From Lama glama (taxonomy: Eukaryota): a stretch of DNA of 64,000 bases. The notes beneath the pieces were generated by a model that ran no database searches, had not been told where the DNA came from, and was given only the letters and a program-made list of their open reading frames with translations. Shown here piece by piece: positions 5,241 through 64,000 of the stretch. A program made the translations under genes and the position numbers. The stretch covers positions 2,232,001 through 2,296,000 of the forward strand of contig CM052821.1 in the NCBI GenBank assembly GCA_028534125.1, read 5' to 3'. Position 1 is the stretch's first letter, and each line of letters begins with the position of its first letter.

Positions 5241-5280
<40 letters not shown>

Positions 5281-5345
5281 ACTGAATCACTGTGCTGTGC
5301 ACCAGAAACTAACACATTGTAAGCCAAGCATATTTCAATAAAATA
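5195..5345 (+). mobile_element. L1 3' end (artiodactyl type) with embedded (TG)15 at 5247-5276
   Basis: gaaaaagaatat ... tataactgaatcactgtgctgtgcaccagaaactaacacattgtaa ... aataaaa is a typical laurasiatherian L1 3' terminus. Confidence 0.7.
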
Positions 5346-5501: not shown

Positions 5502-6202
5502 TGTTTAAAAAAAAAAAAAATCCAACCGAGTAAATTTGAAGATCTAATTGACTTTACTCAACAATTCAGTAACAGGAGTGTCCCATCTAGCAAGTAGAAA
5601 GGAGCTCTGAAGAGCTCTACAAAATAGAAGTGTTTTATACGGAAAAGGGGGCAGGAAAAGGAAGTTTCTAGCGAAGAGCTGTTAAAAAAGAAACAGGCCC
5701 AAAATAGAGTCACTTATGCTAAGGTCCATGTCGTCAAACCAAGACTTGATTGCAGTTTCAGCCTCTCTGAAGAATGTGAGTTTTAACCAGTCAATATGGA
5801 ATTACCTAGCCACCTCATAGACAGCTGCCTCCCCGCAAAGGAAATAACCCGTCCTCCTGTCCGTGACTTCCTTGCCCCACTCCCTTTCTGCTCTTAAAAA
5901 ACCTTTCCTTTTCTGCAGCTGTTTGGAACTCCTTTCTATTTGCTAGGTGGAATGCTGCCTGATTCATGGGTCATTGAATAAAGCCAATGAGAACTTCAAA
6001 TTTACTCAGCTGAATTTTGTTTTTCAACAGAGTGGATTACTTCAGGCAAGATCGCCTTCCTTGTGGTAATTCCGTATTGCCTGGTTAAAGGTCACGTTCC
6101 TAGGAGAGGCTGAAACTGCCATTAGGTCAGGCATTAAATCTTGGTTGCTAACATGGGGCTTAGCACAAGTGACTCCATTACGGGCCCATTTCTTTTTTAA
6201 CA
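5502..6202 (-). mobile_element. Solo LTR (ERV1-like), interrupted by a second LTR at 5680-6029
   Basis: TG...CA termini. Reverse complement begins tgttaaaaaagaaatgggccc and ends ...gatcttcaaatttactcggttggattt...aaaca, homologous to the inner LTR. Confidence 0.7.
5680..6029 (+). mobile_element. Solo LTR (ERV1-like) nested in the LTR above
   Basis: Starts TGTTAAAA, ends TTTTCAACA, contains AATAAA. Flanked by GAGC / GAGT, a 4-bp target-site duplication with one change. Confidence 0.75.
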
Positions 6203-15875: not shown

Positions 15876-15929
<54 letters not shown>

Positions 15930-15934
15930 CACAC
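15876..15934. repeat. (CA)n microsatellite in the TAC3 proximal promoter
   Basis: About 29 CA units with one CG interruption. Confidence 0.95.
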
Positions 15935-50500: not shown

Positions 50501-53500
50501 GCAAAATGGAACTATGGTAATAATTTAAAAAAAAAATCAACCCACTAAAAATGCACAAAACACATCTCTTAAAAAGATGTCCTTTATATTTAAAATGGTA
50601 TGGTTTGCAAAGAACACTGGGAAAAAGAAACACTAAGTAACTTAAATGCCTGGGTACTGGGTATGCAATCTACGTAATTAGCAAACAAGAAGCAGACTTT
50701 ATTTCCCCCACTGCACACAGGATTTCAAATAAAAAGGGAGTTTGTATGTCATCAGCCTCCACACTTCATCCAAGCACCTCTCTGAATCAGGGAAAGAGGA
50801 AGACACTGACTTACCATCCATCAGTGCAAATTTTCAGCACTGTAAAATTATCTAAGAAAACAGTCCTTCAACTATCCAAGCTCATCTAACTAACAGCATT
50901 TACGAATTCTGCTGCTTACCTTGGGCATAAACTTGGAGAGAATGAAAATGATGATTAGTAGGGAGGCCACAATTCCCACACCCATTCCAGTGGAATAGTA
51001 GAAGATTTGACTTCTGCAGAGAGAAAATTCGTTTCATGGCTACGTGTGTATTCTTTATAAATGGCATTGTTCAAACCAGGACAACTATCCCAGCCAAAAG
51101 ATAGAAAAAAGGTACAAGACAAGAGCAGGTATTTGCTCCAAACCTGAGAGAGGTCAGAAGACTGGAGAGACCAGTACAGCGTAGTTGCTGCCAGGTTGTG
51201 AGGATTAGCATCAAGGAGGGTCCTTCGAACAGATCTCAATAACTGACCTCTGCTTAGCCTCCCACTCCCACCCGTAGCCTCTCTCCCCACCCCGTCTGTA
51301 ATAAGAATCTTTCTTCTGAGGAACTGCACAGCTTCCCTGGGGAGAAGGAAGGGGCAAGGGTACTGCCCAAGCGGAGACTGGAAACTGGAACTGAACTGGT
51401 TACCGAAGGACAAACCGAACACAAGGCACGGAACAGAGAGCTCCTATTCCTATTCCAGGCTCCTTCTACCAGATATTCTTTCCCTCACCGTGAGCTTCTC
51501 TCAGGATCCTCAAAATAGAGACAACCTCTGTGAACCTCATGCCAGCTGAACTTCACCTGAACTTCCCCTTTCTTTCACTACTCCACAAATATTCTCCTTG
51601 TGTACAAGGTTAATGTTGATTCCACTTTTGTTCAATGTTTGTTTAGTTAACTGTTTTCTTTGTACTTGTACATGTCTGTTTCACCTAGCCTAGCCAGTAG
51701 GTTCCTAAAGGCAGGAAATAAATGCGTGGATGTGCTTCTTTACCTCTGAATAGCATGAAACTCAGCAAACAGCCCTGTAAAAAGGAGGGCTTACTTCACA
51801 TATTATTTCTAACAGTGGAAAGGGTGGTGACATATTGGCTAAATCCCATCAAACGATGGGTAACCTAGTGGAAGAATTTCATTATTGCCAATCTTATTAA
51901 TATAAGAAAAAATAATAATCATAACACATATTAAACTATTTTTTAAAATTTCCAAGCAGGCAATGGTCTAGCCATCCATAAAGGTCCCGGAAAGGCAGCA
52001 TTTTGGGTCTTTATGATAAAAGTCAAGCAGGGTAGGTCTGAGCCTCACCATTCTGCCCTCTAGCCTTGGAACCTACCTGCTTAGCAAGTCTCCACAAAAA
52101 AATAGCATAAGTCCAAGGAGGAAAATGAGGAAGAGTTTGGCGTCAAATCCTGAAACAAATAAAAGACTTCCGCTTAATAGGGGAACCAAACAATGTAAGG
52201 CATTCTAGAATGAAAGGCAATACTTGAATCATTGGTCAGCAAACAAAATAAACACAAACAGCCTACCTAAACAGCATTTTAAATTTCACACAAAGCCTGG
52301 GCCCCTCCCAAAGAGAAAGTACAATTAGGTCTCTGTCTAACCTGTACTTTCCTGAACAGTTTATTTTTATTTTGGCTACCACGTTAAGCCTAAAAGAAAC
52401 TAAGCTTTGCTTTGGATGGAGCCAGACAGTGCCACCAGCACTTCATGCAGTCGCCCACAAGGGGTCTCTACCATTCTGGCTTTCAAGCCTTAAGTCACTC
52501 ATGGGCTTGGATTCAGCAGATCTGCCTTGAACTCTGGGTCAGGGCCCTCTGCTGTTCTCTGACTGGCTGCTTTTCTTGACCACCACCACCACCTACTTCC
52601 CTTCACTACAAAGCACTGTGTTGGAAAAACCCACACTCAAACACATCTCGCCCAAGACCAGGGGGCCCAAGCAGACGCCCCTTCCTGGCATGTCAGACAC
52701 TCCCACAGCTTTCACATTCAAGAGCTCTGAGTCTAGGGGAGGTCCACAAACAGAACAGGAGCAAGAGGCATCAGCAAATACAAAAGGAACGCCAAAAAAC
52801 AGGCTGATCCGATTCCACCAAAAAGCTGTGGAACCCCAGGACAAATAGAAGGGCACAGCACAGCAAAAACCAGGGACGTTTCTACTACTCTCCTGGGTAC
52901 TTATCAAGGAGAGACCAAAAGTCAGAGAGAGTTCAACAGCATAATGATCCACCTCCTCTCTGCAGCCTTCTCAGACACATTTAGAGAAGGGAAAACCTCT
53001 CCCACTTTCACGGAATAAGCCTTAAACGGCAATGACCTTCACATCTATTCAGTCCTACAAATATTCTTTTGCTTGTGAGGTATTAAGCTGTACCTTTCTT
53101 CAGTTCTGTTGTTTAACCATTCATGTCTTCAAATGCAGGCCTGTACATCTCAGGACATCTACCTGTGTCTATAAGCGCGCAGAGGGCAGGAGGCCGTCTA
53201 TCTTACTCTGAAGAATACTAGGCCTATCAGCTCAGGGCCGCTGGACTAGTAGGAATGCAAGTCTTCACAGTTCTAGGCAAGAAGGCACTCAGAATGACTT
53301 AAGGTGAAGTCTCAATTCCAGGCTAAAAGGGGTCTATGAGGGGTGGAGTCTCTGAACTGTATGGAGCAGCGGTATATTCAGGTTATAATCAGAATCCAAA
53401 CGGAGCTGTCTTGGGCTGACTTCTCTGTCTCACTAATTATACCCTCCAAAGCTCANNNNNNNNNNNNNNNNNNNNNNNNNNNNNNNNNNNNNNNNNNNNN

Positions 53501-56500
53501 NNNNNNNNNNNNNNNNNNNNNNNNNNNNNNNNNNNNNNNNNNNNNNNNNNNNNNNNNNNNNNNNNNNNNNNNNNNNNNNNNNNNNNNNNNNNNNNNNNNN
53601 NNNNNNNNNNNNNNNNNNNNNNNNNNNNNNNNNNNNNNNNNNNNNNNNNNNNNNNNNNNNNNNNNNNNNNNNNNNNNNNNNNNNNNNNNNNNNNNNNNNN
53701 NNNNNNNAACTGTTTACCCGGATCTGCAACACAAGTAAAATCAGGATGAGAAAGGTGGAAGTAGGAATTTTACATTTTCACAAATACAATTTAAAAAAAA
53801 CAAACTTTAGAGTAAACAGCTAAATCAATAATGGCACCAGCTTTCCACAAGGCTTATGAGAAATAGATGCAGCAGCTGAAGCATAATTGGGCAAATAACA
53901 CTGCACGTGGTACAGAGAAGCAGCTGTTAGAATGCCTTATTGTGAGCATGATCGGAATCTACTATTAGACCAGAACATAGGGAAGAAAAAAAAACTTCCA
54001 TGCTGAAAAAGTTACTAATGCATCTATTTATGAGATCATACAAAGCAAGGATCTAAAATATTAAGAAAGTTGCCAGGCATAACAGCTCCAAAATTATTTC
54101 CCATAATGACAGGCTGAAAAGCTCAACCCTCTGTCACAAATCACTGATTATGGATAAATGTTGGTTATAATGTGCCCCAGATGGTATATGATCTTTCTAT
54201 CAGACAATGAAAAGAGAGAATTGGGGGGAAAAAAAACCCCACAAGCTCACCCTTATGTTTTTGATGTGAAGAAATGCCCTTATCAGTAACTATGCTTACA
54301 GGAGCAGAAACATTTTCAAAGGACTCATCTGTTCAATCAGCATAGCCAGACACTCTTGCTTGCCAGGTGGCTCAACAGAGTTATGACACAAATGAGACCA
54401 AAGTCATTCTACTGAGGGGAAACTTCAGCTCGGGGGGTTTAACGCAACATCTTGTGCAGAATCAAAACAGATTAGGAGCAGCAAGGCAGGAGTTTACACC
54501 CTAACAGGCACACAAAGCTTCCAGCCCAAGAAGGTACAAGGCCTTCAGAAAGGGAGAGAGGTGTGTGAGTGTGTGTGAAAGGAGAGAGGGGAAGAGAAAG
54601 AAGGAGTTTCTTTGGGAAAAGAAAAGGAGGAAGGAAGCTTACCTCAGGGTCAAGTACTGGGGGCTATTTAAAGGAACAGAGAGAGGGGAACACAAGGGAG
54701 GCATAAACGCTTACTGATGACAACACTGATTAGATCAAGGATAACCTCAACCTTAGCAAGGTTGTTAATTTTATATACATATTTTTTAAATTGTGTGTGA
54801 GAAGGGAAATAAGTCCAAGTACTCACTAATCACAGACAGACAGATATTTACAGAAACTGCCCCTGCCAGGGGCCTCCAATTATTACCTGTATCCGTGTCC
54901 ATATGTCATGCCACTTCGGGATAAGCACATTTTTATAACAGGATTGTTGACTGGTATTCATATAATAAACTTTGGATTCCTGAAGCATGACCACTTTTAA
55001 ATCAATTCCGGCTTTATGTAAAAAAAGGAGATAAGAATTAAGTATAATAACAAAATAAGCTAATAACTATAATTCATTTCATAAAAAGAATTAAACCGAC
55101 CACTTTCTTAAAGCTAGGGTTAAAGTGTCAGTGACTAAGAAACAAAGAAGAAAACTGAGATGAGAGAAGAAATAAGGCAGTCTTATATCTGACAAATATA
55201 ATTATTTAAATATTAAATAGTCACTAACCCAGGATAAGTAATAATAAAAGCCACTATTAAGTGTTTATTAAGCCAGACAATATGCTGTCTGTCTCATTTA
55301 ACCCTCCCAACAATGTTATAAGGTAGGCATTCTCATAATCCCCATTTTACAAATGGGGAAACTGATGTTGAGGAAAGATTAAGGAATTTGCCCAAAGTCA
55401 CACAGCTAGTAAACAGCTTAACTGAGCTTCACAACCAGGTCCCGTTTCCCTTATAAAGGCATAGCTGAAGTAACCCCATCTGGTGATTTTCTCTATCCCT
55501 TTTCTGAGTAGGATGCACAGAATTGGCAACGTTTTTGTACTGGAGTACTTTAAGCAGATACTAAACGAGAAAGACTGCAAAATTGCTTTTGTTCCAGCTG
55601 TTTGTTTCATTTCAAGTTTCAAGAGCAGCCAATGAACATATGCAGGCCCTTTGATTTTACCAAAACAAACTCCCCTCAGGACTTCGTATTCAATCTTGGC
55701 TAATTTAAGGTTTAAAAGTGACCACTCTCTTATATCTTCCCACCCAAGTTTGCACAAACTTCCTTCTTCACCACGAAACATTTCAATAATTTCTTCCTTA
55801 AGCTCTACATTGTACTTAGCAATTCATTAAGTGCTACTCTAAGGGGAAGGTTAGTTATCTCTCTGATCCTTGGTATAAAAGTGGGTAGATTTAAATAAAC
55901 TGATAAAACAAAAAACACAACAACCTCAACCAAACCTTAGAAAGCCAAAGTTACACACAAAAAAGGGCAACAACACCCATCATTTTGAAACGGCTGAAGG
56001 TGAAGCTAAGACTAATTCTGAAGTTAAATTTGGTCTTAAGCCTAAATGTAAAAACAAAAACTATAAAACTCCTAGAAGAAAACATATAAATCTTTGTGAC
56101 CTTGGATGGCAATGATTTCTTAGATATGACACTAAAGCATAAGCATAAGCAACTCAAGAAAAAAATGATCGGACTTCATAAAAAAATAAATCCAACTTCA
56201 TAAAANNNNNNNNNNNNNNNNNNNNNNNNNNNNNNNNNNNNNNNNNNNNNNNNNNNNNNNNNNNNNNNNNNNNNNNNNNNNNNNNNNNNNNNNNNNNNNN
56301 NNNNNNNNNNNNNNNNNNNNNNNNNNNNNNNNNNNNNNNNNNNNNNNNNNNNNNAAGAGAAATAACCCAATTTTTAGAATGGGTGAAGGACTTAAATAGA
56401 CATTTCTCCAAAGAAGATATACAAATGGCCAACGAGCACAATGAAAAGAAGCTCAACATCATTGGCTGTTACAGGAATGCAAATCAAAATCACAATGAAA

Positions 56501-59500
56501 CACTACTTCAATCTCATTAGGGTGGCTATAATAAAAAGGACAATAACCAAATGCTGACAAGTATGTGAAGAAACTGCAACCCTCACACACTGCTGGTGGA
56601 AATATAATATGGTGCTGCCTCTCAAAAAGTTTGGCAGTTCCTGGAAAACTTAAACACTNNNNNNNNNNNNNNNNNNNNNNNNNNNNNNNNNNNNNNNNNN
56701 NNNNNNNNNNNNNNNNNNNNNNNNNNNNNNNNNNNNNNNNNNNNNNNNNNNNNNNNNNNNNNNNNNNNNNNNNNNNNNNNNNNNNNNNNNNNNNNNNNNN
56801 NNNNNNNNNNNNNNNNNNNNNNNNNNNNNNNNNNNNNNNNNNNNNNNNNNNNNNNNNNNNNNNNNNNNNNNNNNNNNNNNNNNNNNNNNNNNNNNNNNNN
56901 NNNNNNNNNNNNNNNNNNNNNNNNNNNNNNNNGTCCAAAAAAAGGAAAAAAAAGGCCACATATTCAATGATTTCATTTTTATAAATGTCCAGAACAAGCA
57001 AATCCAGAGACAGAAAATAGATCAGTGGTTGCCAGCTGACCCTTGAACACGTGTTTTGGGGCACCGACTCTCAGCACAGTCACAACTCTGCGCATAACTT
57101 CAGTCAGCCCTCTGGATCCACAGTTCTGCACCTTCAAATCCATGTCCTTCAAGGGTCAACTGTATACTAAAAACCACTGAAAGCATGGATTTTATGGTAT
57201 GTGAATTATATCTCAATTTTGTTTTTATTGAAGTAGAGCTGATTTACAATATTGTGTTAGTTGCTGGTGTACAGCAACATCTCCATTTTTTAATTCAGTT
57301 TTGATGTTGCAGAGGAAGAAGAAGTTTTCCCTGACCCTCTTAGGGTCCCTGGCTAGGTCTGGAAATTAAACTGACAAAGACATATTAAATGTAGGAGAAA
57401 TGTATACAAACTTATTTAATGTTTTCCATGACATGAAAGCCTTCATAAGGAAATGAAGACCCAAAGGAACAGTCAGACCTACATACTTTTACGCTGGATG
57501 TGATGAAGAGTGGACAATTGTGGAGGAATACAGTAGGCTGAGTATGAGGTAAGTGTAGTAAACTGCGGGAAACAGCAAAGCCTGTCTACTAGGATTCTTC
57601 TTTGTGTCCCTTTGTCTTCCAAGATAAGGATGCTCTTTTCCTCCCGATATAAGGAGGGCACCTCTCGCGTGAGGATTTTATGATCTGTTTCAGGGAAGAA
57701 GGGCAAAGTGGGGGAGGCAAGAGCGACCTTCCTGCTTCTGCTATTTTCTCAAACTCCCTCAGCTTGAAGTATTTAACATGCCTAGGTGCCATATTTTGGG
57801 GTAATGTGTCCTGAACCCTATCTATCAGTTTCTCACTAGGGTTTAATTCAGTAGTAATTTGGATTTCCTCCAAGCCTATCTTTCATAAAATGAGAACTTT
57901 TCAAAATCCTATTGACATTTGTCTCACTAGAACACCCACAAATATACTGAAAGAACACCCACTTACAAATATGTATCAAGAGTTTATCTTCTTCTGGAGA
58001 CTGTAAGAGAGTAAGATTATGTGAAGCTTAAAACTACTGATACAAATTTATTTTAAAGTCACATTTATTAACCCCTTCCTTCCCACAGCACCAAGTAATA
58101 GAACACAACATTTTTTTAAGCCCATTATTATTTCCAAGAGTACTAAGATACAAATAAGGTCTCAATAGCACAGGCTATTTGAAGAACTTAATGCCAAGAA
58201 AATGCATCTGTGTTTTTAAACTAACTTTAAAATTCTTCAGTATCATTTTTGTAAAGAAATAAAACTTCTACAAAAAGCAACATTTAAAAAAACCTAGTTC
58301 TTCCTTTTCCCAAGTTCCACACCATTCAAAGGAAATCGCTGTAAATAAACACACAAATAATCTCATTTAATAGCAACCTCCTACAGAAATCAGCACCTTG
58401 GCCAGCCACAGCTTTGGCAATTCACTGAGAGGGAAAATATACCAATTCAGCCTAAGAGGATAATCTGTGGAAACAATCACCACTCCAGCTATAGCATAAG
58501 TTGTTAGAAACACAGAACTAAACCAAATTACCTTAAACACACACGGGTTGTCAAAATGCTCATGTTAGAACCTTGCGCTTTCTGTAGCAAAAGGACATAC
58601 AACACCTTTCTTCCCCTCCCCAAGGTGAGTTAGCCAGCGTGGTAAAAGAAGAAAGAATTAAACATTAAAAAAAAAAAAAAGCCTTCTGAGCCCAAAAATC
58701 TAGTAGTTTTTGGAAAATGCCTTCTTCGAATTTAGTGAATCACAACTAGCTTATTGTATTTATCCATAAAGCACCTACTTAAAGATTTATAACTTCATAT
58801 TTACTTATAAACATTATGAACTTACTTTCACCTACTTTTCAATCAACAACACTGATCATTTAACATTTACTAGTAAAAGGTAACGAAAATAATTCATAGT
58901 ATGTGAGGACCAGAACAAACCCTAAAAAGTCATGAAAAACAACCTCTTCTAATTCTTAAATAGCCTCTATTCATTTCTGTCAAAAGGCAATCCCATTCAT
59001 ACTTAAAAGCCTCCTTAAAGACTAGCACCTTAAATCAGTGGGCTTAGCAAAGGACTATTCAATGAGATGCTAGAACAACCGACTGGTTATAAGGAAAATA
59101 AAATCTATCTAGATACCCACACCAAACACTACATTAACTATTGATTAAAAAGTAAAATGAAACATAATTAAATCATAACACACACACACATATACATATA
59201 TATGTATGAATCAATTCAATTTTGGAGAGCTCTTTAAGCATAAAAGAAGTGAAAATAAATCTAAAGAATAAATTCAAGTGACCACATAGAAGTATAAATA
59301 AAAATAAATATTTAAAAAGATAAAGGGAGCAAACAAATTAAAGTTCTGCAATAAATAAATACATTTAGTAAAAATATATATCTTTGATACATAAAAAAGT
59401 TCATACAAGTTAAGTATACAAAAATCACAATAAACAGCAACCACAATAAATAGCCAAGAACAAAGGACACACTTATACTCCAAAAAAAAAAAAGTCTAAA

Positions 59501-61653
59501 TAGAAAATTAAATTAATAAACAGTTGAAAGATGCTTCCTCACAAGTAATGCAAGAAATGCAAAATAAATTAAGATACCACTTTTGATCTATCAAATTAGC
59601 AAAAGTGTTACAGTATAGAATATCCAATGCTGGCAAAGGTATGGGTCACAAGCAAATAAAGCTGATAGTGATGTAAACTGGCACACATTTTCAGAAATTA
59701 TTTTAGCAAAATGTTTCAAGGGTCTTACATGTATTTTAGCCTTTGATTGAATAAATCCATTTCTGAGAATCTATCCTTAAAAATGAAAATCCAAATGGTC
59801 TGTCCATAGGCTAGAACAGAATACACGTAAAAATAACATTTATGAAGAATTTTAAATGACATAGGTAAATGTTTATGCTACAGAATCAAATGAGAAAACT
59901 ATCTCTGGTAACAGGGAAGAGAACTGGATTGCTGACAGGCACATGAATGTATCATCAATTCAAAAATTTTTTTTAATTAAAAACATGTAGAAGCAGACCA
60001 GAAGAAAGTGTGCAATAATAGACTGCCTCTGAACATAATAAACAATAAACAATGGAATAACTAAGTATAAATAACAATAAATGACGTGTTATTTATACTT
60101 AATTGTACTTGCCCAATAGTCTTAAATAAATTCACATTATTTTTATAATGAAGTTTTTCAAAAACCTCCAGTGAGAAAGAACTCCCTTCCTGTCTTTTGA
60201 AGTACTCCATTCTCTCTTTAGGTACCTCTCACTTTTACAAAGTTCTACTCTATTACATGATTGTCTCTTTGTAGCTGCCACCTACATGATCTACCAGGCC
60301 ACAAAGAACAAATATCCCGAGTTGACCCTTCTCCAAGCCAAAAAGTCTCCCGTTCCTCTCCTCATCAAAGAAACTTTGGAACTTTTGATTGAACACTGAC
60401 TATGCAGGAGCATTCTGGTATATATATTCTTTCATCCCCACAATCCACAATCCCATTTTAGAAGTTAACCATCAGGCCAAAGTTCATTCAGATCATACGG
60501 AGCCCTTCAGATATTATTCTGGGGCCCGCTTCTGGAAAAGTACCTTCCCGATACCCACTCCACTCTCCCTAAAAAAAAAAAAAAAACTGTTTCGCAAAGA
60601 CGCTGCACTTTTTAACTAGTTCTATGAATCCTGAGACAACCTTAAAGCTGCAGGTAAGGATAACACAAGTGACAGCAAGAGATAGGCAGCAAACGACAGG
60701 AGGGGAGAGAGCATATGTGTTCATGAGATAGGATTATCCTTATCCCCGTGAGTCTCAACTCCCTCCAGTGGAAGCTTGGAAACCTCACTTATCTTTCTGT
60801 TGTGTATTTAACAAGAATAGGTTCTTTACAAACACGCTCTAGGTTTTCCGGATTATAGCGAAAAAGTAAAATAATTTCGTCCCAGTCCAAAGCCAATTAT
60901 CCAGTAGTAGGTATCAAGTAAGTTTGACGAATGAATAAACTTCCAAAAGAATCCTACTCGAAGCTGAATAACGTTTGTATCTTTTTTTGGAAACAGGAAT
61001 TTAACAGCTCCAGGTCGGTTCTAGGGTGCCGCTAGGGACCAAGATCTTACAAGGACAGAGGACAGGAGATATTGACAGAGATCACTGCATTTCAGTTAAC
61101 TATAATTATCTGTTCAGCCATCCATGTCCTGAGTCCTGCCACCATAGGCTCAGGTGTTGGCTAATTTTCTCAATGAATGGGATACTCTCTTTCCAAAGGC
61201 AGCTCTGCCTGCCAGTATGGTCCTCAGGTCTCCTTCCTTTTAAACCAAAAAACTGGAGGAGGCCCACGCAGCACGACGCAGCCCGTAGAACCGCTTCTCA
61301 CCCAGTGCAGGCCTCCCCATCTCCGCCAAAAGACGCCAGGCTCCTCCCCACTCTGGGTAGCTCCCTTAGGCCGCCCCAGGGCCCCGGCCCCTCAATGCCG
61401 GCGCCCAATCGCGGAGGATGAAGCTTCTGCCTCTGCACCACGCCCGCGCCCCTCCGCAGAGTAACGGCCCGCGCCCTGGGGACAGTCCCCACTTTTCTGA
61501 ATATAACCCCTCTGCAACTTCTGCCCGGGCGGTACCTGAGCCGCAGACCAAGCAGCCACAGAGGACCAGTCGCAGCCACACTGCCCCAGCTCCCCAACTC
61601 CGGGGCCCGGCACCAACTGCCGGCAAGACCGCCACTTTCATTCCTCCCGCCAT
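47561..61653 (-). CDS. NEMP1: Nuclear envelope integral membrane protein 1 (TMEM194A), about 442 aa
   Basis: Exons 61536-61653 ([39 protein letters not shown]), 54887-55011, exon 3 starting at 53723 (IRVNS..., rest in N run; an orthologue-sized 220-nt exon would end near 53504), 52077-52149, 50920-51013, 50327-50441, 49417-49642, 48469-48642, 47561-47744. Contains [31 protein letters not shown] and C-terminal NNFLT*. Confidence 0.95.
56030..57215 (+). mobile_element. L1M ORF2/3'UTR remnant with two N runs
   Basis: cctaaatgtaaaaacaaaaactataaaactcctagaagaaaacata ... aatagacatttctccaaagaagatatacaaatggccaa ... gaatgcaaatcaaaatcacaatgaaacactacttca. Confidence 0.85.
57033..57162. mobile_element. 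Short Tigger2-like MITE inside the L1 3' end
   Basis: TIRs cagctgacccttgaa ... ttcaagggtcaactg followed by TA. Confidence 0.75.
57308..57822 (-). mobile_element. Solo LTR, ERV1/MER4-group-like
   Basis: aaattaaactgacaaagac ... tgccatattttggggtaatgtgtcctgaaccc; similar type to 4071-4417 in the opposite orientation. Confidence 0.65.
59030..59990 (+). mobile_element. Old L1ME-type remnant
   Basis: aaggactattcaatgagatgctagaacaac ... agaaatgcaaaataaattaagataccacttttgatctatcaaattagcaaa ... tgtaaactggcacacatttt; AT-rich and degraded. Confidence 0.6.
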
Positions 61654-62260
61654 GGTCGCCTCATACCACCTCCCCCTCACGTGCTTCTCCCCGGCAACTA
61701 ACTCGGAATAGGCAGGGCCAGCAACCTATCCGCTACAAGGCCCAGCCCCTACCAACCAACCGGGTGGGCGGAGCTTCGAGCACTCAGTCCTTTACGGACC
61801 CTATAGTCCCGCCTCTTAGCAACTGACGCGAGAGGGCGGGAAAAAGCAGCTTTCAGCCTATTAGAAAACGGGTTCTCGCCTCAGCAATGGCGACAGGAAG
61901 ATCCCACCCCTTAACAACATGCTTCCGTCTCCAGTTTATTTACAACTCGGGCGATTGATGGTAAGCGTAGCCTATAGAAAATCAGGATGGGCGAGGCCTC
62001 CTTGACCAAACGATATTTCCATCGAAACTGCCTTAGGTTCCTTCTGTTTTCTTTCTTTCCTTTTTACCACGATCTTTTTGATATGGGAAACTTAAGACAA
62101 GTTTCCGACCCGCGACCATGGAGGGAGAAATGAAAGTGGCGGTCTTGCCGGCAGTTGGTGCCGGGCCCCGCAGTTAGGGAGCTGGGGCAGTGTGGCTGCT
62201 CCTGGTCCTCTCTGGCTGCTTGTGTCTTCCAAAGTATGAAATTATTTGAAACGGAAGTCA
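61260..62260. promoter_or_regulatory. NEMP1 CpG-rich promoter
   Basis: CpG-rich; GC box GGGCGGAG (~61766), E2F site GCGGGAAA (61836-61843), RFX-like GCAAC half-sites, YY1-like AATGGCG, CHR TTTGAA (62245-62250), ETS CGGAAGT (62252-62258). Confidence 0.75.
62112..62222 (+). pseudogene. Inverted partial copy of NEMP1 exon 1 with a premature stop
   Basis: Ungapped reverse complement of 61549-61659, 104/111 identical. ATG 62118 to TAG 62175-62177 encodes [19 protein letters not shown]. Confidence 0.92.
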
Positions 62261-62859
62261 CAACAAAAAACTGCGTGGATAGTGTTTTATAGGAATAAAC
62301 ATTAAGTTTAAAATGTAGTCATAGGGTTTTTTCTTTTTTTGGAAGCGAAATGAATGTGAAGATTAAGAGAAACTTTTTTAATTCCTCACAACGTCCTGTG
62401 AGATATTTAAGAAAAAGCCAAGGCAAAGGAACCTGCCCAAGATTGCACAGTTCTTTGGGCTGGCTTGTAGTTCCAACCCAAGTCTTACCCCAAAGCCTGA
62501 GTTCTTTCTATGCATCAGGTGCTTCCCATTAAATGACTTACACAGTGAGGGCCTAGCAGAGTGCCTAGTACATAACAGATGTTCAGTAAATACTAGTTGA
62601 AACTGAAGCATCTTATTTTTTAGAAGATCTGATAGGGGTGGGTAGGAACAATAGAGATAATGGAGCTGAGTGAGTTGCAAGGAAATTTAGGAAAGGAGGT
62701 AACTGCTGGGGAAGGTTCAAGCTTTCACAACAAGGGATTTTTATGACGTCAAAATAGGGTTGAGCTATGGGCAAGAGAAGAAATTTCATGCTCAGAAAAG
62801 TCTAGGCCAGCCCTGCTACAGTGGTCATCCTGTCTCTCACACACACACACCACACACTC

Positions 62860-63330
62860 CCCTGCCTGACCTAGAAAGGTTAATATCAACAGTGATAAAT
62901 TACCATGATACTACATAACCTTGATATAGTGTGATGAAAATGGTGAAACCATGAAACTAATCTAATCATGAGATAAACATTTTAAACATTCAAATAGAGA
63001 GGCATCTACAAAATACCTGACCAGTAATCCTCAAAACTATCAAGGTCATGAAAAACAAAGAAACTGGGAAACTGTAACAGCCAAGAGGAAACCAGATGTA
63101 ATATGGTATCACAGATGAGATCCTGGAACAGGAAAAAAAAGGTAAAAATTAAGGAAATCTGAATAAACTATCAACTTTTAGTTAATAATAATATAGCAAC
63201 ACTGGTTCAGTAATGGTGGCAGGTGCACTATACCAGTGAAGGTTATATTAGTGGAAACTGGATGTGGGGCACATGAGAACTCTCTGTATTACCGTCTCAA
63301 TTTTTCTGTACGTCTGAAACTGTCTTAGAA
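62860..63330 (+). mobile_element. L1MC/MD-type 3'UTR fragment
   Basis: tctaatcatgagataaacat ... tacaaaatacctgaccagtaatcctcaaaactatcaaggtcatgaaaaacaaagaaa ... atcctggaacaggaaaa ... ggaaatctgaataaact ... gaactctctgtatta. Confidence 0.75.
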
Positions 63331-64000
63331 AATAGTTAAGACGCACACACACACACAGACACACACACACACATACACGATTTTCTACCGGGTCTAAAAT
63401 TCTCAGCATTCAGACCTCGCTCTTTGGTTTTGAATAAAGGCCAGAGAATAGGGGAACTAATTCCAGGGTTGGGGACTAATTCCAGAAGATCACTGACCAC
63501 TGACTATTAAAATGTGTAAACGAGGTGGACAGTAATGAAACTTATTGTCCATAAACATATCACACCTTATCATCCAAATGAGTTCTGTCACTTCCAGGTA
63601 GTCACTCAAGAAGCTTTTAGCCTTGTTTTAATAATGAGGACACTGCTCAAAATGCTTTGAGAATCATCTTCAGAATCTATAGCACACACTGCAATGAATA
63701 TTCATTATCTGCAGGTGGATCTGATTTATGCAAATAGCCAAAAGAACTTAGGCTAAGACAAATGAGTAAATGGGGTGGGAAATCTGGATAGTAAATGTGT
63801 TCCAGAGTTTTTTTGGATTTTAGAAAGGTAATATGGTGCATTTACAATATGTAAGGCAACACTCTAGTGGGGTCTAGGACAGTCTAGGACAGCACCCTAT
63901 AATCCAACAAATTAATATTTCTGTAATGAGAGATAGGAATATTCACACTGGAATAAATGAAAGTGGGATAAATGAAATCATAAATAACCTCATGTAAGTT

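What the first reader, a model, noticed from the sequence alone, without database searches (positions are those of the whole stretch)
61549..62222. NEMP1 promoter is bracketed by a 111-bp inverted duplicate of its own start codon and signal-peptide exon
Seen: 62112-62222 (+) is an ungapped reverse complement of 61549-61659. It has 7 mismatches in 111 bp and a 42-bp perfect core, and the 452-bp spacer holds the GC/E2F promoter elements. It is not a transposon. Inference, four options. (1) Divergent transcription from the promoter makes an RNA whose 5' end mimics NEMP1 mRNA. (2) A minus-strand transcript starting beyond ~62230 carries both arms and could fold a ~111-bp stem that buries the NEMP1 AUG, a possible ADAR/Dicer/PKR substrate or translation off-switch. 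(3) Recombination between the arms would flip the promoter, and a crossover on the far side of the TAG would move the stop into the gene. (4) It is a neutral relic. I know of no description of this arrangement but cannot search.
Basis: partly seen in the sequence, partly recalled or inferred. Interest (0 to 1): 0.85.

Follow-up and report, generated by a model that had tools for sequence, protein, structure and literature searches.

The report
Old inverted NEMP1 start-codon copy in camelids
A real 111-base backwards copy of the start of the nuclear-envelope gene NEMP1 lies just beyond that gene's promoter in a South American camelid. It looks like an old, dead by-product of a DNA copying error, not a regulatory device.

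Summary
Bases 62112-62222 (+) are the ungapped reverse complement of 61549-61659, with 7 mismatches, a 42-nt perfect core and a 452-bp spacer (blastn E 7e-44). There is no third copy and no homology beyond the arms.

The gene is NEMP1 (Pfam PF10225 on three exons). The window comes from a Lamini camelid; its exons match alpaca NEMP1.

The copy holds 6 nt of 5'UTR plus codons 1-35. Twenty-seven mammalian N-termini polarise the mismatches:
- The copy carries camelid-only states (R18, a 3-residue deletion, W26).
- It keeps ancestral S32, where all camelids have C, and L28, where Lamini have R.
- Its own changes are A2E, G4E, one synonymous change and W20stop.

So it arose on the camelid stem, most parsimoniously before camels and llamas split (11-25 My). 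It has drifted at about the neutral rate (4/111), with no gene conversion at codons 28 and 32.

Independent DNA runs hold 96-98% of the region's 31-mers, which argues against an assembly artefact.

Best reading: a relic of a replication template switch or templated repair.

The parts
61549..61659 (-). Source arm: last 6 nt of the NEMP1 5'UTR plus codons 1-35 ([35 protein letters not shown]); part of exon 1
62112..62222 (+). Inverted copy (dead exon-1 fragment). Reads [34 protein letters not shown]. With a 1-nt gap the homology runs to 62227
61660..62111 (-). 452-bp spacer: rest of the 5'UTR, the NEMP1 core promoter and upstream CpG-rich DNA (GGGCGG at 61766 and 61834; GGCGGGAAA at 61835). No internal palindromy
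61651..61653 (-). NEMP1 start codon
61534..61536 (-). Last base of exon 1 (61536) and donor GT (61535-61534), 13 nt beyond the end of the source arm. The copy therefore has no splice donor
62175..62177 (+). TAG at codon 20 of the copy (gene has TGG, Trp)
62294..62299 (+). AATAAA about 70 nt after the copy on the + strand. It could end promoter-upstream transcripts (string match only)
61935..61940 (-). AATAAA on the minus strand between the copy and the gene. It could end transcripts entering from upstream before they reach the second arm (string match only)

Best explanation
This is a real, old, camelid-specific inverted micro-duplication. On the camelid stem lineage, 111-116 bp covering the NEMP1 start codon and N-terminal signal-like region were copied in reverse complement. 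The copy landed about 450 bp upstream, at the distal edge of the gene's CpG-island promoter. The most likely cause is a replication template switch or templated break repair (a '3-2-1-4'-type event that creates an inverted repeat). The copy has no promoter, no splice donor and no open frame. It has since drifted at about the neutral rate without being homogenised with the gene. It survives as a non-functional relic, kept CpG-rich only because it sits inside the unmethylated promoter island. Shown: the repeat, its content, the polarity of each difference and the lack of homology beyond the arms. Inferred: the mechanism of origin, the age, presence in Old World camels and the lack of function.
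For: (a) The repeat is real and far beyond chance.
(b) It is probably not an assembly artefact. 129 of the 1971 31-mers of 61000-63000 are specific to the copy. DNA runs of three coded organisms from two studies hold 0.98 of the sampled words, and further runs hold 0.96 and 0.94. Losing the whole copy is incompatible with 0.98 (P 0.001) and unlikely at 0.96 (P 0.06). The arms differ at 7 sites and no gap is nearby.
(c) The gene is NEMP1. The window's exons match alpaca NEMP1 except S19/I19 and differ from Camelus at 4 residues.
(d) Polarity from 27 mammalian N-termini. The copy shares the camelid-only states R18, the 3-residue deletion and W26. It keeps S32, which is ancestral in deer, whales, carnivores, bats, primates, xenarthrans and afrotherians, while all camelids have C32. 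It keeps L28 as in Camelus, while the Lamini gene has R28 through a TC>GA dinucleotide change.
(e) The copy's own derived changes are A2E, G4E, a synonymous R18 change and W20stop: 4/111 = 3.6%. The camel/llama split is dated 11 My (fossils) to 25 My (mtDNA) (PMC1939714). That gives at most 1.4-3.3e-9 changes per site per year, which is in the neutral range.
(f) There is no homology beyond the arms, no exon-2 sequence, no poly(A), no target-site duplication and no other copies.
(g) Template switching that writes a reverse-complement copy of nearby sequence and creates inverted repeats is documented in primate genomes. Fragments reach 128 nt (PMC5453318; PMC7954356).
(h) Rfam finds nothing in 61000-63000.
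Against: - No orthologous DNA from Camelus or from non-camelids could be fetched. Presence in camels, the empty ancestral site and the switch points are predictions, not observations.
- No clear microhomology is visible at either junction.
- At 111 nt and 452 nt away, the event is at the long and distant end of described short-range template switches (median 12 nt; search space about +/-100 nt).
- The copy keeps 5 of 7 CpGs and shows no CpG-to-TpG decay. Its position inside the island explains this, but it is also what a bound or functional element would show.
- RNA runs hold 0.08-0.29 of the region's words. I could not see which part, so transcription of the copy is not excluded.
- With only 111 nt, constraint on a sub-part cannot be excluded.
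- S32 in the copy could be a reversal, or C32 could have arisen twice; muntjacs show the same change.
Confidence: 0.7

Rival explanations
1. The copy is functional at the RNA level. In one version, a minus-strand transcript starting upstream of 62230 carries both arms and folds a stem of about 111 bp that hides the NEMP1 AUG or feeds Dicer or ADAR. In the other, antisense RNA from the copy pairs in trans with the 5' end of NEMP1 mRNA.
For: An RNA spanning 62240-61530 (minus strand) would fold with the arms paired, at -405.7 kcal/mol and z -16 against shuffles. Hairpin RNAs from inverted pseudogene copies are reported to give endo-siRNAs (PMC3616710 and related papers; the mouse oocyte cases are own knowledge). 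NEMP1 is needed for fertility and erythroblast enucleation (PMC7455189, PMC9595564). Three RNA runs hold more of the region (0.19-0.29) than exon 1 alone would give (about 0.1).
Against: The known promoter lies between the arms, so normal mRNA has one arm only. The DNA beyond the copy is AT-rich and CpG-poor, with no second island. A minus-strand AATAAA at 61940 lies between the arms. The copy decays at about the neutral rate. No Rfam family matches. No read evidence is available.
Confidence: 0.08
2. The copy acts as DNA. It would be an extra piece of promoter or CpG island carrying binding sites copied from the +1 to +110 region, modulating the NEMP1 promoter or its divergent transcription. 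The upstream antisense RNA would then begin like NEMP1 mRNA.
For: CpG observed/expected stays at 0.7-0.9 from the promoter through the copy to about 62400. Five of 7 CpGs survive with no deamination-type change. An ETS-like ACGGAAG sits 29 nt beyond the copy (62251).
Against: The CGCCAT/ATGGCG string over the gene's ATG, which resembles a YY1 core (own knowledge), is destroyed in the copy by the C>A change at 62122. CpG retention is expected for any sequence inside an unmethylated island. The plus-strand AATAAA at 62294 would end upstream transcripts quickly. No conservation data are available.
Confidence: 0.1
3. It is an assembly artefact: a false inverted duplication introduced during assembly, gap filling or polishing.
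For: First-stage notes on other windows of this genome list many non-transposon inverted repeats of about 85-250 bp, some perfect. These are unchecked and could point to a systematic assembly habit.
Against: The arms differ at 7 sites, and the states make phylogenetic sense: the copy keeps ancestral S32 and L28. No gap is within 4.6 kb. Independent DNA runs of several organisms and studies hold 0.94-0.98 of the region's 31-mers, which is not possible at 0.98 without the copy-specific words.
Confidence: 0.03
4. It is a recombination switch. Crossing-over between the arms inverts the 452-bp promoter segment and turns NEMP1 off, or moves the TAG into the gene.
For: Inverted arms flank the promoter, so the geometry allows it.
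Against: The arms are 94% identical, with only a 42-nt perfect stretch, which is short for homologous recombination in mammals (own knowledge). The differences at codons 28 and 32 have persisted on their own sides since before the Lamini radiation and probably since before the camel/llama split, so no exchange has occurred across them. The runs hold nearly all reference-orientation words. NEMP1 loss harms fertility (PMC7455189), so flipped alleles would be selected against.
Confidence: 0.02

Closest known systems
Short-range replication template-switch mutations (four-point model; event type 3-2-1-4 / 1-4-3-2), Loytynoja & Goldman 2017 (PMC5453318); Walker et al. 2021 (PMC7954356)
   Same: A stretch of nearby sequence is written in reverse complement into a new place on the same strand, creating a new inverted repeat. 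No transposon features are present. It is a single local event, and most such events lengthen the sequence.
   Different: Described events have a median copied length of 12 nt (maximum 128) and were sought within about +/-100 nt. This one is 111-116 nt and 452 nt away. No microhomology is evident.
Hairpin-RNA / endo-siRNA loci formed by inverted pseudogene duplicates (mouse oocytes, own knowledge; human psiPPM1K, PMC3616710)
   Same: An inverted, dead partial copy of a gene that could base-pair with the parent sequence. The parent gene, NEMP1, matters in oocytes.
   Different: Those loci are transcribed across both arms or antisense to the parent, and small RNAs map to them. Here the gene's promoter lies between the arms, no transcript through the copy is shown, and the arm is only 111 nt.
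Processed (retro)pseudogene fragments
   Same: A dead partial copy of coding sequence with a premature stop.
   Different: The copy stops 13 nt before the end of exon 1 and has no exon-2 sequence, no poly(A) tail and no target-site duplication. It lies 452 bp from its source in inverted orientation, which points to a DNA-level origin.

Membership tests
Template-switch inverted templated insertion | The new segment is the reverse complement of sequence close by on the same chromosome | tested here: met
   111 nt at 94%, 452 nt away
Template-switch inverted templated insertion | Homology is confined to one block with sharp ends, not part of a larger duplicated or palindromic segment | tested here: met
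   Inner spacer halves and outer flanks align no better than shuffles
Template-switch inverted templated insertion | The ancestral or outgroup sequence lacks the segment at that site, and one switch event explains the difference | not testable with these tools
Template-switch inverted templated insertion | Size and distance fall within the range of described short-range events | tested here: inconclusive
   The length (111-116 nt) is below the reported maximum of 128 nt. The distance (452 nt) exceeds the +/-100 nt searched in PMC7954356
Processed pseudogene | Spliced exons, a poly(A) tail and target-site duplication | tested here: not met
   The copy ends inside exon 1. It is followed by unrelated AT-rich DNA, not exon 2 or an A-run. 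The flanks AGCCGCAGAC and TGTCTTCCAA differ
Transposon with terminal inverted repeats | Arms are a repeated family, target-site duplication is present, and the arms are not host coding sequence | tested here: not met
   Only two copies exist in 64 kb, and one is the gene's own exon 1. No TSD
Hairpin-RNA / endo-siRNA locus | One transcript spans both arms, and small RNAs map to the arms | not testable with these tools
The fold of a hypothetical RNA is strong, but that follows from the repeat itself
NEMP family gene (identity of the host gene) | Pfam PF10225 above the gathering score | tested here: met
   Three exon ORFs score 93.1, 72.6 and 35.7 bits against a cut-off of 28.7. The exons equal alpaca NEMP1
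Assembly artefact | Absent from independent read sets; identical arms; next to a gap | tested here: not met
   Several independent DNA runs hold 0.94-0.98 of the 31-mers. There are 7 phylogenetically sensible differences. The nearest N run is 4.6 kb away.

The most novel reading that the evidence does not exclude
In camelid germ cells or erythroid cells, transcription enters the copy from upstream on the minus strand. The resulting RNA is antisense to, or folds back on, the first 111 nt of NEMP1 mRNA. It would yield small RNAs or an edited duplex that tunes NEMP1 translation. This would be a lineage-specific built-in regulator born from a template switch.
Probability: 0.05. Interest if true: 0.55.

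Novelty: new member of a known kind. Interest (0 to 1): 0.22.

Why it matters
As found, it is a tidy, datable example of a long (about 111 nt) inverted templated duplication that hit a gene's own start codon and landed at its promoter edge. The parent gene's amino-acid history lets every one of the seven differences be assigned to one arm. That gives a relative date: after three camelid-stem changes and before a fourth. It also shows that a 94%-identical inverted repeat 452 bp apart can persist for many millions of years without gene conversion or inversion. That is useful to people studying template-switch mutation and inverted-repeat stability. It does not by itself change what is known about NEMP1 regulation. 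First-stage notes list many similar non-transposon inverted repeats in this genome. If they prove real, a genome-wide count with polarity, as done here, could measure how often long template switches occur in camelids.

Tried and rejected
- **Read laying on 58001-64000.** So there is no direct read, joint or RNA-coverage evidence. No letters of 58650-58691 were sent as a query to any search tool afterwards. One search went out in the same turn and was by coordinates only. and my scripts read the whole window locally.
- **Protein search with the 65-aa mechanical ORF that spans the copy.** No candidate, so the protein collection cannot show which species carry the copy.
- **Metagenome scan with a 26-mer from the perfect core.** 0 hits. 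The second scan was not used, because any arm-specific pattern would fail for the same reason, and a coding-pattern scan risked fetching human contigs.
- **Earlier findings near this place, or on 'template switch'.** Nothing.
- **Rfam on 61000-63000.** Nothing.
- **Larger fold-back duplication later trimmed.** Rejected, since there is no residual palindromy.
- **Retrocopy or capture of a short 5' RNA.** Rejected. The copy starts 6 nt before the ATG, but predicted mRNAs of other mammals extend well upstream of that ATG (N-termini) and the GC boxes lie 110-180 nt upstream, so the copy's start is not the transcription start.
- **Gene conversion inferred from the 42-nt perfect core.** Not significant (P 0.25-0.37).
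- **Excess of transversions (5 of 7).** Marginal only (P 0.04-0.18). It disappears once the changes are assigned to the two lineages.
- **Joined NEMP1 protein model.** The spliced NEMP1 model was searched exon by exon by reference only. The joined protein was not built.
Full report
**Observation.** The repeat exists exactly as described. The repeat finder gives arms 61549-61659 and 62112-62222, 111 nt, 94% complementary, 452 nt apart. A direct comparison gives 7 mismatches and a longest perfect run of 42 nt. With one 1-nt gap, blastn extends the match to 61545-61659 / 62112-62227 (116 nt, 93%, E 7e-44 against the window). It finds no third copy. In the whole 64-kb window, the only other inverted pair of at least 60 nt within 3 kb is a weak 64-nt, 83% pair near 5.7-6.1 kb. 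Local alignments of the two inner halves of the spacer, and of the DNA outside the arms, score no better than shuffled sequence. The duplication is therefore one sharp block, not the remnant of a larger palindrome.

**What the arms are.**
- Three minus-strand exon ORFs further down the window match Pfam PF10225 (NEMP family) at 93, 73 and 36 bits, against a cut-off of 28.7.
- Exon-by-exon tblastn shows the window's exons equal alpaca NEMP1 (P0275) except for S19 versus I19. They differ from the Camelus protein (P0270) at four residues. The window is therefore from a South American camelid (Lamini).
- I did not build a joined protein; exons were searched singly by reference.
- The gene-side arm is the last 6 nt of the 5'UTR plus codons 1-35 (ATG 61653-61651).
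- Exon 1 runs 13 nt further, to 61536, with its donor GT at 61535-61534. The copy therefore lacks a splice donor.
- On the + strand the copy reads [19 protein letters not shown]-stop, with TAG at 62175-62177.
These are string matches only.
- GC content and CpG observed/expected (0.7-0.9) stay island-like from about 61200 through the copy to about 62400, then fall to near zero.

I therefore have only indirect evidence.
- Of the 1971 31-mers in 61000-63000, 129 are specific to the copy or its junctions.
- Six DNA runs of three coded organisms in two studies hold 0.98 of the 207 sampled words. Others hold 0.96, 0.96 and 0.94.
- If the copy were absent, about 13.5 sampled words should be missing. 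Four missing words has P 0.001 and eight has P 0.06.
- At most one of these runs can be the source of the assembly.
- The runs at 0.91 (organism E and one run of C) are uninformative.
- The arms also differ at 7 sites, and no N run lies within 4.6 kb.

An assembly artefact is therefore unlikely (about 3%).

**Polarity and age.** A single-exon search of the representative library gave a full-length NEMP1 (P0005). That protein in turn gave named mammalian orthologues and cluster members. The aligned N-termini of 27 species polarise every difference.
- *Camelid-only states in the copy.* Non-camelids read ...GAGPWSWGAGGGGAVRLLLVLSGCLVCGS. Camelids have R18 for W, a 3-residue deletion and W for R ('AVWLLL'). 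The copy has all three, so it was made in the camelid lineage.
- *Codon 32.* All camelids (three Camelus species, alpaca, this window) have C. Deer, whales, carnivores, bats, a lemur, a marmot, xenarthrans and an aardvark have S. The copy has S (TCT against TGT).
- *Codon 28.* Camelus and all outgroups have L. The Lamini gene has R through a TC>GA dinucleotide change. The copy has L (CTC).
- *Changes on the copy itself.* These are A2E (C>A), G4E (G>A), a synonymous R18 change (CGG>CGC) and W20stop (G>A).

The most parsimonious history is a duplication on the camelid stem, after three stem substitutions and before S32C. That places it before the Camelini/Lamini split, dated 11 My from fossils and 25 My from mtDNA (PMC1939714). 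The chance that the copy returned to S at that exact site is about 1%, given 4-5 changes in 111 sites. An independent S>C in both tribes is possible, since muntjacs did the same, but is less parsimonious.

Four changes in 111 nt (3.6%; Poisson range roughly 1-8%) over at least 11-25 My gives at most 1.4-3.3e-9 per site per year. That is within ordinary mammalian neutral rates (own knowledge). The differences at codons 28 and 32 have stayed on their own sides, so gene conversion has not swept the distal part of the arms. The 42-nt perfect core is what chance gives for 6-7 differences (P 0.25-0.37).

**CpG content.** The copy keeps 5 of the gene arm's 7 CpGs. The two lost ones went by transversion, not deamination. 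A methylated sequence of this age should have lost several, so the copy has probably stayed unmethylated in the germ line. That is expected from its position within the promoter island's CpG-rich domain and needs no function of its own. It is, however, the one feature that a DNA-level role would also predict.

**Origin.** There is no exon-2 sequence, poly(A) tail or target-site duplication, and no other family members. Retroposition and transposition are therefore out. The copy's start, 6 nt before the ATG, is not the transcription start. Predicted proteins of other mammals read through in-frame sequence upstream of this ATG, and the GC boxes lie 110-180 nt upstream.

A reverse-complement copy of nearby sequence written into the same strand is the signature of replication template switching. 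The '3-2-1-4' type creates an inverted repeat and made up 31% of high-confidence human-chimp events (PMC5453318). In great apes the copied fragment has a median of 12 nt and a maximum of 128 nt, within a search space of about +/-100 nt (PMC7954356). This case is long but within range, and further away than was searched there. I see no clear microhomology at the junctions. Without an outgroup sequence, the switch points cannot be placed. Templated break repair would give the same product.

**Function.**
- *Hairpin RNA.* A hypothetical minus-strand RNA from 62240 to 61530 would pair the arms (-405.7 kcal/mol, z -16), but that follows from the repeat itself. The promoter lies between the arms, so NEMP1 mRNA has only one arm. 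The DNA beyond the copy is AT-rich and CpG-poor. A minus-strand AATAAA (61940-61935) lies between the arms.
- *Divergent transcript.* On the + strand, a divergent promoter transcript would carry the copy in sense orientation. It would meet a 19-codon ORF and then AATAAA at 62294, the usual fate of unstable upstream transcripts (own knowledge).
- *Known RNA families.* Rfam finds nothing.
- *RNA runs.* They hold 0.08-0.29 of the region's words. About 0.1 is what exon 1 alone would give. The higher shares could be intron or upstream RNA, but I could not look.
- *Promoter flipping.* This is unlikely. The perfect stretch is 42 nt, the arm-specific states are old, and NEMP1 loss reduces fertility (PMC7455189).

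**Verdict.** RNA-level or DNA-level function is not excluded; together these stand at about 0.2. It is a new example of a known kind of mutation. Its particular interest is that the parent gene's protein history dates it and shows long-term stability without conversion.

**Tool limits.** No mammalian DNA collection was available. No human contig was fetched or compared.

Noticed in passing
window 61570-61571 (codon 28 of NEMP1): The Lamini gene (this window and alpaca RefSeq) has Arg28 (CGA). Camelus, the inverted copy and all outgroups have Leu (the copy reads CTC). The change is a TC>GA dinucleotide swap, which is its own reverse complement and so is a possible 2-nt micro-inversion. It puts a charge in the hydrophobic core of the signal-like N-terminus.
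   Followed up: partly
window 53456-53707 and neighbours (between 54884 and 52168): No exon for NEMP1 residues about 83-148 is seen in the window. An N run (53456-53707) lies between the exon ending at 54884 and the one starting near 52168.
   Followed up: no
other windows of this genome (notes s1-860061, s1-858455, s1-863210, s1-861995, s1-861987, s1-859304): First-stage readers flagged many non-transposon inverted repeats of about 85-250 bp with 0.5-3.5 kb spacers in this genome. Several are near-perfect and lie at promoters or exons. They may form a genome-wide class (long template switches) or reflect an assembly habit. None has been followed up.
   Followed up: no
window 5743-5806 / 6065-6128: A second, weaker inverted pair (64 nt, 83%, 258 nt apart). 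It was not examined and may be a repeat-element pair.
   Followed up: no
window 61598 region (codon 19): The window has Ser19, as do Camelus and the inverted copy. The alpaca RefSeq protein has Ile19. The window is either another Lamini species or an alpaca allele.
   Followed up: partly
window 63334-63379, 15876-15934, 5241-5283: Simple-repeat tracts match one another (blastn hits of 30-43 nt). They are ordinary microsatellites.
   Followed up: no
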